IMG/VR virus record: IMGVR_UViG_3300042868_009074
Location: 203,767-267,766 of that record
Reading direction: 5' to 3' (one strand)
Length of the DNA: 64,000 nt
In this document: in pieces, positions 47,676 to 48,293 of the stretch
Layout: every line of letters starts with the position of its first letter
Position numbering within the stretch: position 1 is the stretch's first letter
Notes under the pieces: generated by a model
The model's database searches: none
What the model was told of the DNA's origin: nothing
The model's input: only the letters and a program-made list of their open reading frames with translations
Program-made: the position numbers and the translations under genes

Positions 47676-48293
47676 ATGACAACTATTATAGGTATACAAG
47701 GTGATAATTACGCATTGATATGTTCTGACTCTAGAATATCAACAATGGATTCTGGTGGATTTGCTTCTCAGATAACAACTTTAAAAGAAAGTACTAATAA
47801 AGTTGGAACTAATGGTAGATACCTTCTCGGTGCTGCCGGAGACATGAGAGCAATCAATATTCTTCATCACGTTTTTCAACCCCCCATGCCTACTCCAGGT
47901 TTAGTAGGAAGAAAGCTAGATCAGTTCATTACATCTAAATTTGTCCCTGCTTTAATAAACTGTTTTGAGAATCAGGGCTATGCTACTCCTGAAAGCAATG
48001 AAGATAAAAACCACATTAACGAACATGCTTCTTCTATATTGACAGTCCTTAATGGATCTATCTATGTTGTAGAAGGGGATTATTCTTGGACATCTGATGC
48101 TAGTGGCCTTTATGCCCTAGGAACAGGTTCTCCGTACGCCTTAGGCGCTCTACAGATCCTTATGGGTAAGAAGTCCCCTACCGTCTCACAAGCCCGTGCA
48201 ATCGCTCTCAAGGCCATTGCAGTGGCAGCTAAGTATGATCCTTATACTGGATCACCATTCCACTGTTATGTTCAGAATGCAACAGACAAGTAA
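47676..48293 (+). CDS. proteasome beta/HslV-like Ntn threonine protease
   Basis: N-terminal (M)TTIIGI...DSRIS, K, GAAGD, ALGTGS.YALGAL, D.YTG. Confidence 0.8.
   Translation: MTTIIGIQGDNYALICSDSRISTMDSGGFASQITTLKESTNKVGTNGRYLLGAAGDMRAINILHHVFQPPMPTPGLVGRKLDQFITSKFVPALINCFENQGYATPESNEDKNHINEHASSILTVLNGSIYVVEGDYSWTSDASGLYALGTGSPYALGALQILMGKKSPTVSQARAIALKAIAVAAKYDPYTGSPFHCYVQNATDK

What the first reader, a model, noticed from the sequence alone, without database searches (positions are those of the whole stretch)
47676..48293. Proteasome-beta/HslV-type protease that could complete a phage ubiquitin-proteasome pathway
The N-terminal Thr nucleophile (M-TTIIG), DSR, K, GAAGD and GTGS motifs mark an Ntn protease. 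With the Ubl operon and AAA+ ATPase, the phage would have tag, unfoldase and protease. The gene lies 13.5 kb from the operon and similar peptidases occur in phages without Ubls, so the link is inference.
Basis: partly seen in the sequence, partly recalled or inferred. Interest (0 to 1): 0.6.

Follow-up and report, generated by a model that had tools for sequence, protein, structure and literature searches.

The report
Stand-alone proteasome-like protease of actinophages
The gene really encodes a proteasome/HslV-type threonine protease, but related phages carry it without the ubiquitin-like operon and carry the operon without it, so it is an ordinary swappable accessory protease, not the missing part of a phage ubiquitin-proteasome pathway.

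Summary
Observation confirmed. Window 47676-48293(+) is a 205-aa ORF with a good ribosome-binding site. It matches Pfam Proteasome (PF00227) and PHROG 1040 'peptidase HslV family'. Its predicted fold is closest to BPH, then HslV, then 20S beta subunits. Thr1, Asp17, Lys33, GAAGD and the G-S/T-G motif are conserved in 28 relatives.

- The Cdc48-like AAA always sits in a fixed eight-gene block with JAB, E1 and the Ubl (48 of 49 loci; the other is cut at the contig end).
- Five long genomes with that block, three of them at least 90% complete, have no proteasome-family gene. One has an unrelated ORF at the same slot.
- Six complete ~97-kb phages carry a 60-63% identical protease but no E1, no JAB and no classic AAA.
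- Five isolated phages with homologs also lack an E1.

All three lineages checked for WhiB encode it, so these are freshwater actinophages. Phage-borne HslV/BPH-like homologs were described in 2021. My best reading is a self-compartmentalising accessory protease that works without a phage unfoldase. Substrates are unknown.

The 267-kb record also looks over-assembled, which explains a second "paralog".

The parts
47676..48293 (+). Gene for a 205-aa proteasome/HslV/BPH-type N-terminal-threonine protease (P0001). There is no propeptide, so removal of Met1 would expose Thr as the nucleophile.
47664..47670 (+). Shine-Dalgarno-like AAAGAGG, 5 nt upstream of the ATG
   Evidence: Read directly from the sequence. 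All homologs start at the same MTT.
47081..47440 (+). Neighbouring 119-aa double CxxC zinc-ribbon protein. It is adjacent to the protease slot in all jumbo relatives, upstream here and downstream in the others. It is also present where the protease is absent, so it marks the slot and is not a dependent partner.
41853..42134 (+). 93-aa KTSC-like small gene that marks the other edge of the variable slot. In relatives it directly precedes the protease. In this window 5.5 kb of small ORFs plus tRNA-Asn and tRNA-Gly are inserted between them.
27327..35188 (+). Context only, tested and found separable from the protease. This is a conserved eight-gene block: p130, p640 (Cys-rich), JAB 29685-31385, ThiF/E1 31369-32133, 83-aa Ubl candidate 32151-32402 ending in Gly, Cdc48-D2-like AAA 32519-34141, p208 and p136.

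Best explanation
The gene encodes an active threonine protease of the HslV/BPH branch of the proteasome family ('group I' homologs). Host methionine aminopeptidase would remove Met1 and expose Thr as the nucleophile, with Asp17 and Lys33 equivalents (D18, K42) completing the catalytic site. By analogy with HslV and BPH, the subunits should stack into a two-ring chamber with the active sites facing inward. That assembly is inferred, not shown.

The gene is a patchily distributed accessory cassette shared among WhiB-encoding freshwater actinophages. It sits at the end of the early/DNA-metabolism transcription block. It works without any phage-encoded unfoldase and independently of the Ubl/E1/JAB/AAA operon. 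It most likely degrades unfolded or loosely folded host or phage polypeptides during infection, for host takeover, counter-defence or amino-acid recycling.

Shown: family, fold, conserved catalytic residues, phyletic independence from the operon, and the variable slot. Inferred: ring assembly, stand-alone action and substrates.
For: - Family and fold: Pfam PF00227, PHROG 1040, and a family profile against PDB giving HslV/CodW 2.4e-7 and BPH 3.5e-5. The AF2 model has pLDDT 86. The Foldseek top hits are BPH 5ovs (TM 0.69-0.78), then HslV, then 20S beta.
- Catalytic residues are invariant in 28 relatives.
- Abundance: 793 related proteins at E<=1e-3 and 129 viral contigs.
- Independence, first direction: six 99-100% complete ~97-kb phages, one with terminal repeats, carry a 60-63% identical protease. 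They have no ThiF, no Prok-JAB and no AAA above cut-off. Two jumbo positive controls have all three.
- Independence, second direction: the eight-gene Ubl/AAA block is intact in 48 of 49 loci, the other being cut at the contig end. G032, G033, G038, G039 and G040 have the block but no protease and no phrog_1040 hit at E<=0.01.
- Variable slot: at the syntenic position G033 carries an unrelated 121-aa ORF.
- Five isolated phages with homologs have no ThiF. In them the gene lies among early, tRNA or nucleotide-metabolism genes.
- No HslU is present in these phages.
- The protease is the only gene in a +/-10 kb neighbourhood shared between the jumbo and ~97-kb lineages. A tree does not separate the two lineages.
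- Every record checked in both of these lineages, and the DSL-LC01 phage, encodes WhiB.
- Literature: BPH has no known partner unfoldase (PMC5777263). Phage-borne group-I homologs are already described (PMC8665760). Patchy peptidases in jumbo phages are expected to be aimed at the host (PMC7824862).
Against: No substrate, activity or oligomer has been measured. Within the jumbo clade, 11 of 16 long AAA-bearing records do carry both modules, on the same strand and 8-13 kb apart in those measured, so a facultative link is not excluded. The protease-less jumbo records are 75-92% complete linear contigs, although the syntenic slot lies inside those whose downstream region was aligned. HslV alone is a weak protease without HslU, so a stand-alone role may need a host partner. 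In the ~97-kb phages the gene lies next to the portal and capsid genes, which hints at another role there.
Confidence: 0.62

Rival explanations
1. One reading: in phages that carry both, the protease is the degradation chamber fed by the Cdc48-like AAA of the Ubl operon. Together they would form a viral tag-unfoldase-protease pathway.
For: Both modules are present on the same strand and 8-13 kb apart in the window, in its colinear copy and in 11 of 16 long jumbo relatives. The AAA is Cdc48/VAT-D2-like (E 1e-60). It has a Y-I-G pore loop and an intact, invariant Walker A motif and arginine-finger region. A conserved aromatic residue lies in its last 1-3 positions, reminiscent of a docking tail. 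Cdc48/VAT-type ATPases are known proteasome partners (established knowledge).
Against: There is double dissociation: the block occurs without the protease and the protease without the block. The AAA tail motif is equally conserved in genomes that lack the protease, so whatever it docks to is not this protein. Only one proteasome-family gene exists per complete genome, so there is no alpha-type ring of the kind classic AAA ATPases dock on. The protease belongs to the HslV/BPH branch, whose only known partner is the unrelated HslU.
Confidence: 0.1
2. The protease needs an unfoldase but borrows one from the actinobacterial host, for example ARC/Mpa, Cpa or a Clp ATPase. It would redirect host proteolysis.
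For: No phage-encoded HslU or conserved ATPase neighbour is found. The clade is restricted to WhiB-encoding actinophages. HslV is known to depend on an ATPase for protein substrates (established knowledge).
Against: There is no evidence of any docking surface. According to Table 1 of PMC8665760, HslV is not found in Actinobacteria, so the natural partner type would be missing. BPH, the closest fold, has no known partner (PMC5777263).
Confidence: 0.15
3. It is a virion or prohead maturation protease, at least in the ~97-kb phage lineage.
For: In 69 of 80 loci the gene follows a metallophosphoesterase. In 52-53 loci it is followed by a 95-aa gene, then portal, a 264-aa protein and the major capsid protein. 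No S78 or ClpP-type prohead protease was found in four complete ~97-kb genomes or in jumbo G008.
Against: Head genes of the two lineages show no similarity while the protease is 60-69% identical, which is unusual for a co-adapted morphogenetic enzyme. Jumbo relatives lose the gene without replacement of the same family. In the window and in isolated phages it lies in early or nucleotide-metabolism regions. Other prohead protease families were not searched. No Ntn-type prohead protease is known (my own knowledge).
Confidence: 0.07
4. It is not a degradative protease but a ligase or transpeptidase, or a non-catalytic relative, as with connectase.
For: The proteasome family includes a sequence-specific ligase (PMC7980362).
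Against: The full proteasomal catalytic set is invariant. The closest folds are chamber-forming proteases, not connectase.
Confidence: 0.03

Closest known systems
BPH (bacterial proteasome homolog; PDB 5ovs/5ovt/5ovu; PMC5777263)
   Same: It is the best structural match (Foldseek E 3.6e-12, TM 0.69-0.78) and the best single-sequence PDB hit. It shares the G-S/T-G-S-P-Y-A-L-G-A motif. It has no propeptide and no phage-encoded or otherwise evident partner unfoldase.
   Different: Identity is only 18-19%. This protein has its own Pro-rich loop (residues 66-78) and a poorly modelled insertion (100-118). It occurs in phages rather than in stress operons of Proteobacteria. A heptameric ring and an acidic cavity were not tested.
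HslV/ClpQ/CodW (peptidase of the HslUV protease)
   Same: It is the best profile match (B. subtilis CodW 2z3a, E 2.4e-7). It shares the Met-Thr-Thr start, Asp17, Lys33 and the GSGG-type motif. Databases name it 'HslV family'.
   Different: No HslU is present in any of the phage genomes tested. The likely hosts are Actinobacteria, where HslV is not reported (PMC8665760, Table 1). It is about 25-30 residues longer than HslV.
Phage-borne group-I proteasome homologs AAH, CPH and PPH (Fuchs, Alva and Lupas 2021, PMC8665760)
   Same: It fits the same evolutionary neighbourhood (radiating from BPH/HslV), has a compact subunit, and is carried and spread by phages.
   Different: PPH is about 140 residues, while this protein is 205. 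Assignment to AAH or CPH could not be tested because their reference sequences are not on hand. That paper found no actinophage encoding AAH, whereas this clade is in WhiB-encoding actinophages.
20S proteasome with Cdc48/VAT, PAN or Mpa, and the archaeal SAMP / actinobacterial Pup tagging systems
   Same: The same genome has a tag (Ubl ending in Gly), an E1, a JAB isopeptidase and a Cdc48-like unfoldase, together with a proteasome-family protease.
   Different: There is no alpha-type subunit, the protease and the operon are separable in evolution, and no canonical HbYX motif is present. This is resemblance by parts list only.

Membership tests
Proteasome/HslV Ntn-hydrolase family (Pfam PF00227, MEROPS T1) | Sequence match above the curated threshold | tested here: met
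   PF00227 scores 31.7 bits against a cut-off of 22.4. PHROG 1040 gives 1.6e-25.
Proteasome/HslV Ntn-hydrolase family (Pfam PF00227, MEROPS T1) | N-terminal Thr nucleophile with Asp/Glu17, Lys33 and the Gly47 and Ser129-type motifs | tested here: met
   T2, D18, K42, GAAGD 52-56 and G149-x-G151 are invariant in 28 relatives.
Proteasome/HslV Ntn-hydrolase family (Pfam PF00227, MEROPS T1) | Alpha-beta-beta-alpha sandwich fold | tested here: met
   The AF2 model has pLDDT 86. Foldseek gives probability 1.00 to BPH, HslV and 20S beta.
Proteasome/HslV Ntn-hydrolase family (Pfam PF00227, MEROPS T1) | Stacked-ring chamber and peptidase activity | not testable with these tools
   This needs expression, SEC/EM and peptide assays.
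HslV proper (HslUV) | A cognate HslU ATPase | tested here: not met
   TIGR00390 finds nothing near its cut-off (best 19 bits against 362) in G000, G008, G011, G015 and G036. Host genomes were not tested.
BPH | Cluster membership by sequence, tetradecamer, acidic cavity, long pore loop | tested here: inconclusive
   It is the best fold match, but identity is only 18-19% and the profile E-value is 3.5e-5, no better than for HslV. Oligomer state was not testable.
PPH (phage and host proteasome homolog) | Subunit of about 140 residues | tested here: not met
   This protein has 205 residues and relatives have 195-233. The PPH definition is from PMC8665760.
AAH / CPH | Clustering with the reference sequences named in PMC8665760 | not tested
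The length and the phage and Actinobacteria association are compatible.
Integrated Ubl-unfoldase-protease pathway | Components co-inherited across genomes | tested here: not met
   The block occurs without the protease in 5 long records. The protease occurs without the block in 6 complete genomes and 5 isolated phages.
Integrated Ubl-unfoldase-protease pathway | Docking architecture: an alpha-type ring plus an HbYX tail, or an HslU-type tail | tested here: not met
   There is one proteasome-family gene per complete genome. The AAA ends in W/F-containing tails rather than Hb-Y-X, and these are conserved even without the protease.
Integrated Ubl-unfoldase-protease pathway | Physical binding of AAA and protease | not testable with these tools
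   This needs pull-down or cryo-EM of the ring complexes.

The most novel reading that the evidence does not exclude
In the jumbo actinophages that keep both modules, the HslV/BPH-like chamber is used facultatively by the operon's Cdc48-like AAA to destroy Ubl-tagged host proteins. Relatives that lack the chamber would hand substrates to the host 20S proteasome through the same conserved aromatic C-terminal tail. That would be a virus-encoded ubiquitin-proteasome analogue with an exchangeable protease.
Probability: 0.08. Interest if true: 0.8.

Novelty: new member of a known kind. Interest (0 to 1): 0.3.

Why it matters
The result removes an attractive but unsupported story of a complete phage ubiquitin-proteasome system. 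It leaves two cleaner questions.

First, why do several unrelated lineages of freshwater actinophages keep, and apparently exchange, a catalytically intact proteasome-like chamber with no unfoldase of their own? Hundreds of relatives exist, and the hosts are reported to lack HslV.

Second, the Cdc48-like AAA belongs to the Ubl/E1/JAB block itself, so its partner should be sought elsewhere, possibly in the host. Culturable carriers (Microbacterium phage Pumpernickel, Actinomycetia phage DSL-LC01) make the first question testable.

Tried and rejected
- Complex prediction of the AAA (residues 230-540, alignment A2) with the protease (A1) gave 'no answer', score 0.00. This is no evidence either way, since a 1:1 model cannot represent ring-on-ring docking.
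- Megablast of 8 kb around the gene against GenBank phages found nothing.
- The genome-contig scan found only two relatives (56-60% identity), on short MAG contigs (Cyclobacteriaceae, Gammaproteobacteria). These are probably mis-binned phage DNA, so no close cellular homolog and no host clue came from it.
- tblastn of the ~97-kb phages' metallophosphoesterase, portal, 264-aa protein and capsid protein against the whole 267-kb record found nothing.
- PHROG scans of the genes downstream of the protease gave only tail-fibre and structural hits and no partner.
- I first read the second copy at G000 32096-32704 as an alpha/beta-like paralog pair. I rejected this because terminal-repeat-complete relatives of 202-211 kb have one copy, and the copy lies in a colinear duplicate of the whole window.
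- The protease tree could neither show nor exclude a single transfer between lineages, because of a polytomy.
- The large representative-protein search was not used because the family was not in doubt. RNA and read tools were not used. Literature searches found no paper on this operon-protease combination.

Full report
**1. The observation**

Window 47676-48293(+) is an uninterrupted 205-codon frame that starts MTTIIG. The reverse strand is closed by many stops. An AAAGAGG ribosome-binding site lies 5 nt before the ATG.

The protein (P0001) passes Pfam's curated threshold for Proteasome PF00227. It matches PHROG 1040 'peptidase HslV family' at 1.6e-25 over its whole length. By sequence, its best solved relative is BPH (5ovs), followed by several HslV entries.

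A 28-sequence alignment of relatives at 43-81% identity shows T2, T3, D18, S19, K42, GAAGD 52-56, G149, G151 and D188 to be invariant. This is the proteasomal Thr1/Asp17/Lys33 set plus the Gly47 and Ser129-type motifs. A profile of that alignment hits HslV/CodW at 2.4e-7, BPH at 3.5e-5 and 20S beta at 3e-4.

AlphaFold2 gives a confident model (pLDDT 86, pTM 0.82). Foldseek ranks BPH first (TM 0.69-0.78), then HslV, then 20S beta subunits, all at probability 1.00.

**2. The setting**

The window is the last 64 kb of a 267,766-bp IMG/VR virus record. It carries six tRNA genes.

Upstream on the same strand lie, in order:
- a 130-aa protein;
- a Cys-rich 640-aa protein;
- a 566-aa JAB protein;
- a 254-aa ThiF/E1;
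- an 83-aa candidate Ubl ending in Gly;
- a 540-aa single-module AAA ATPase.

The AAA's best solved relatives are the D2 modules of Cdc48, VAT and p97 (E 1e-60). Further downstream are SSB- and UDG-like genes. The protease is the last gene of this rightward block. It abuts leftward tail-fibre and structural genes.

The record encodes WhiB regulators, a marker used to recognise actinophages (PMC10914622). The closest GenBank relative of the protease (47% identity) is in the freshwater Actinomycetia phage DSL-LC01, next to a WhiB gene.

**3. The co-occurrence test**

*(a) From the protease.* 129 viral contigs encode relatives. Of 26 long records, only seven contain the AAA, and all seven belong to a ~205-216-kb jumbo lineage colinear with the window. 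Six records of 95-98 kb are 99-100% complete, one with terminal repeats. They carry a 60-63% identical protease but no ThiF, no Prok-JAB and no AAA above cut-off. Two jumbo positive controls show all three.

In the ~97-kb lineage the protease is the only gene in a +/-10-kb neighbourhood shared with the window. Its portal, capsid and neighbouring genes have no match anywhere in the 267-kb record. Both lineages encode WhiB.

Five isolated phages with more distant homologs (DSL-LC01, Pumpernickel, D'Alembert, MTATph1, PhiF1) have no ThiF. They carry the gene among early, tRNA or nucleotide-metabolism genes.

*(b) From the AAA.* 49 viral loci encode relatives. In 48 of them the eight genes p130-p640-JAB-E1-Ubl-AAA-p208-p136 keep the same order; the other locus is cut at the contig end. 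The AAA is therefore an integral part of the Ubl operon.

Of 20 long AAA-bearing records, 11 have the protease once. G032, G033 (92% complete), G039 (90%), G038 and G040 have none. They also have no PHROG 1040 match at E<=0.01.

I aligned 20 kb downstream of the AAA in these records. In protease-positive genomes the gene lies between a KTSC-like 96-aa gene and a zinc-ribbon gene. In G032, G033 and G040 both flanking genes are present, and the gap holds an unrelated 121-aa ORF (L135 8722-9087).

The protease therefore occupies a variable slot and is gained or lost independently of the operon. A maximum-likelihood tree puts the jumbo and ~97-kb proteases in one fully supported clade, separate from DSL-LC01-type sequences. 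It does not separate the two lineages inside that clade. This is compatible with exchange between phages of similar hosts but does not prove it.

**4. Other points that bear on the proposed coupling**

- Complete genomes have a single proteasome-family gene. There is therefore no alpha-type ring of the kind classic AAA unfoldases dock on.
- The AAA carries a conserved aromatic residue within its last one to three positions (WKI, FKW, TWK, NW, SF). The motif is equally conserved in genomes without the protease. If it is a docking tail, its target is something else, possibly a host 20S proteasome. That last point is speculation.
- No HslU is encoded by any tested phage. HslV is not reported in Actinobacteria (PMC8665760, Table 1).

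**5. What it most likely is**

It is a catalytically intact, self-compartmentalising threonine protease of the HslV/BPH radiation. It is carried as a patchy accessory gene by WhiB-encoding freshwater actinophages and acts without a phage unfoldase.

BPH, its nearest fold, also lacks a known partner (PMC5777263). Iyer and colleagues noted that patchily distributed peptidases in jumbo phages are those expected to be aimed at the host (PMC7824862).

Ring assembly, stand-alone activity and substrates are inferences. Each is scored in its own section.

**6. Comparison with what is known**

Fuchs, Alva and Lupas (2021) already described phage-borne group-I proteasome homologs (PPH, AAH, CPH) radiating from BPH and HslV. 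They argued that phages spread them. GenBank records already annotate the DSL-LC01 and Pumpernickel genes as HslV or protease.

This gene is therefore a new member of a known kind. Two modest additions come from this work. The clade is abundant in actinophages, which that paper did not find for AAH. The clade is also demonstrably uncoupled from a neighbouring Ubl/AAA operon. Assignment to AAH or CPH could not be tested here.

**7. A side finding: the record looks over-assembled**

The first ~51 kb of the 267-kb record repeat the gene order of the window gene for gene, at 25-92% amino-acid identity. The repeat includes its own JAB, E1, Ubl, AAA and a 67-68% identical protease.

Five terminal-repeat-complete relatives are 202-211 kb and have one copy of each. 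A 104-kb contig listed under another sample is 100% identical to G000 159551-263617. That supports the window's own contiguity.

The record is most likely an over-extended or chimeric assembly of two related phages. The apparent 'second paralog' is then an ortholog.

**Verdict**

The family assignment is right. The pathway interpretation is not supported. Interest is low to moderate.

Noticed in passing
Whole record G000: 1025-51375 versus 208038-267641 (= window 4272-63875): The first ~51 kb of the 267-kb record are colinear, gene for gene, with the window at 25-92% aa identity. The last 298 nt match 50366-50663 at 91%. Terminal-repeat-complete relatives are 202-211 kb with single copies. The record is probably an over-extended or chimeric assembly of two related phages, not a real duplication.
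   Followed up: partly
window 27327-35188: An eight-gene block (p130, Cys-rich p640, JAB, E1, 83-aa Ubl ending in Gly, Cdc48-D2-like AAA, p208, p136) keeps the same order in 48 of 49 viral loci; one is cut at the contig end. The AAA is part of the Ubl operon itself. p640 and the JAB protein carry many CxxC pairs.
   Followed up: partly
window 34100-34141 (C-terminus of the AAA) and loci L085-L133: The AAA tails vary in sequence but keep an aromatic residue in the last 1-3 positions (FKW, WKI, TWK, NW, SF), including in genomes without the protease. This may be a docking tail for an unknown, perhaps host, partner.
   Followed up: partly
window 25182-25376 (in ORF 25101-25508); also G000 13892-14080 and 7-123: WhiB-family regulator genes are present. 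The ~97-kb phages and jumbo relative G008 also have 2-3 each. This points to Actinomycetota hosts for all lineages that share the protease.
   Followed up: yes
window 42135-47080: Between the KTSC-like gene and the zinc-ribbon gene, relatives have only the protease or a 121-aa ORF. This window instead has about 5 kb of small ORFs plus tRNA-Asn (46443-46516) and tRNA-Gly (46735-46806). The order of protease and zinc-ribbon gene is also inverted relative to the other genomes.
   Followed up: partly
L009 6515-12345 and 68 further loci of the ~97-kb phage lineage: There the protease is directly preceded by a metallophosphoesterase. It is followed by a 95-aa gene, an SPP1-type portal, an unannotated 264-aa protein and the major capsid protein. 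No S78 or ClpP prohead protease was found in four complete genomes of that lineage.
   Followed up: partly
window 56195-58336, inside ORF 56134-58518(-): Self-alignment shows a ladder of shifted matches about 159 nt apart at 73-76% identity. This indicates tandem ~53-aa repeats in a 794-aa protein with four PHROG 5490 stretches, next to tail-fibre-like genes.
   Followed up: no
window 26617-27060: A small 147-aa hydrophobic ORF contains an HELGH motif and gives a sub-threshold match to Peptidase_M50 (site-2 protease family), just upstream of the Ubl block.
   Followed up: no
L141 (Cyclobacteriaceae MAG contig) and L142 (Gammaproteobacteria MAG contig): The only genome-collection relatives of the protease (56-60% identity) lie on 21-23-kb MAG contigs of unrelated phyla. 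These are probably phage contigs binned by mistake.
   Followed up: no
Proteins P0037, P0122, P0127, P0228, P0230, P0233, P0237 (relatives): Several relatives of the protease carry Lys/Arg-rich C-terminal tails of 15-50 residues that the window's protein lacks. Their meaning is unknown.
   Followed up: no
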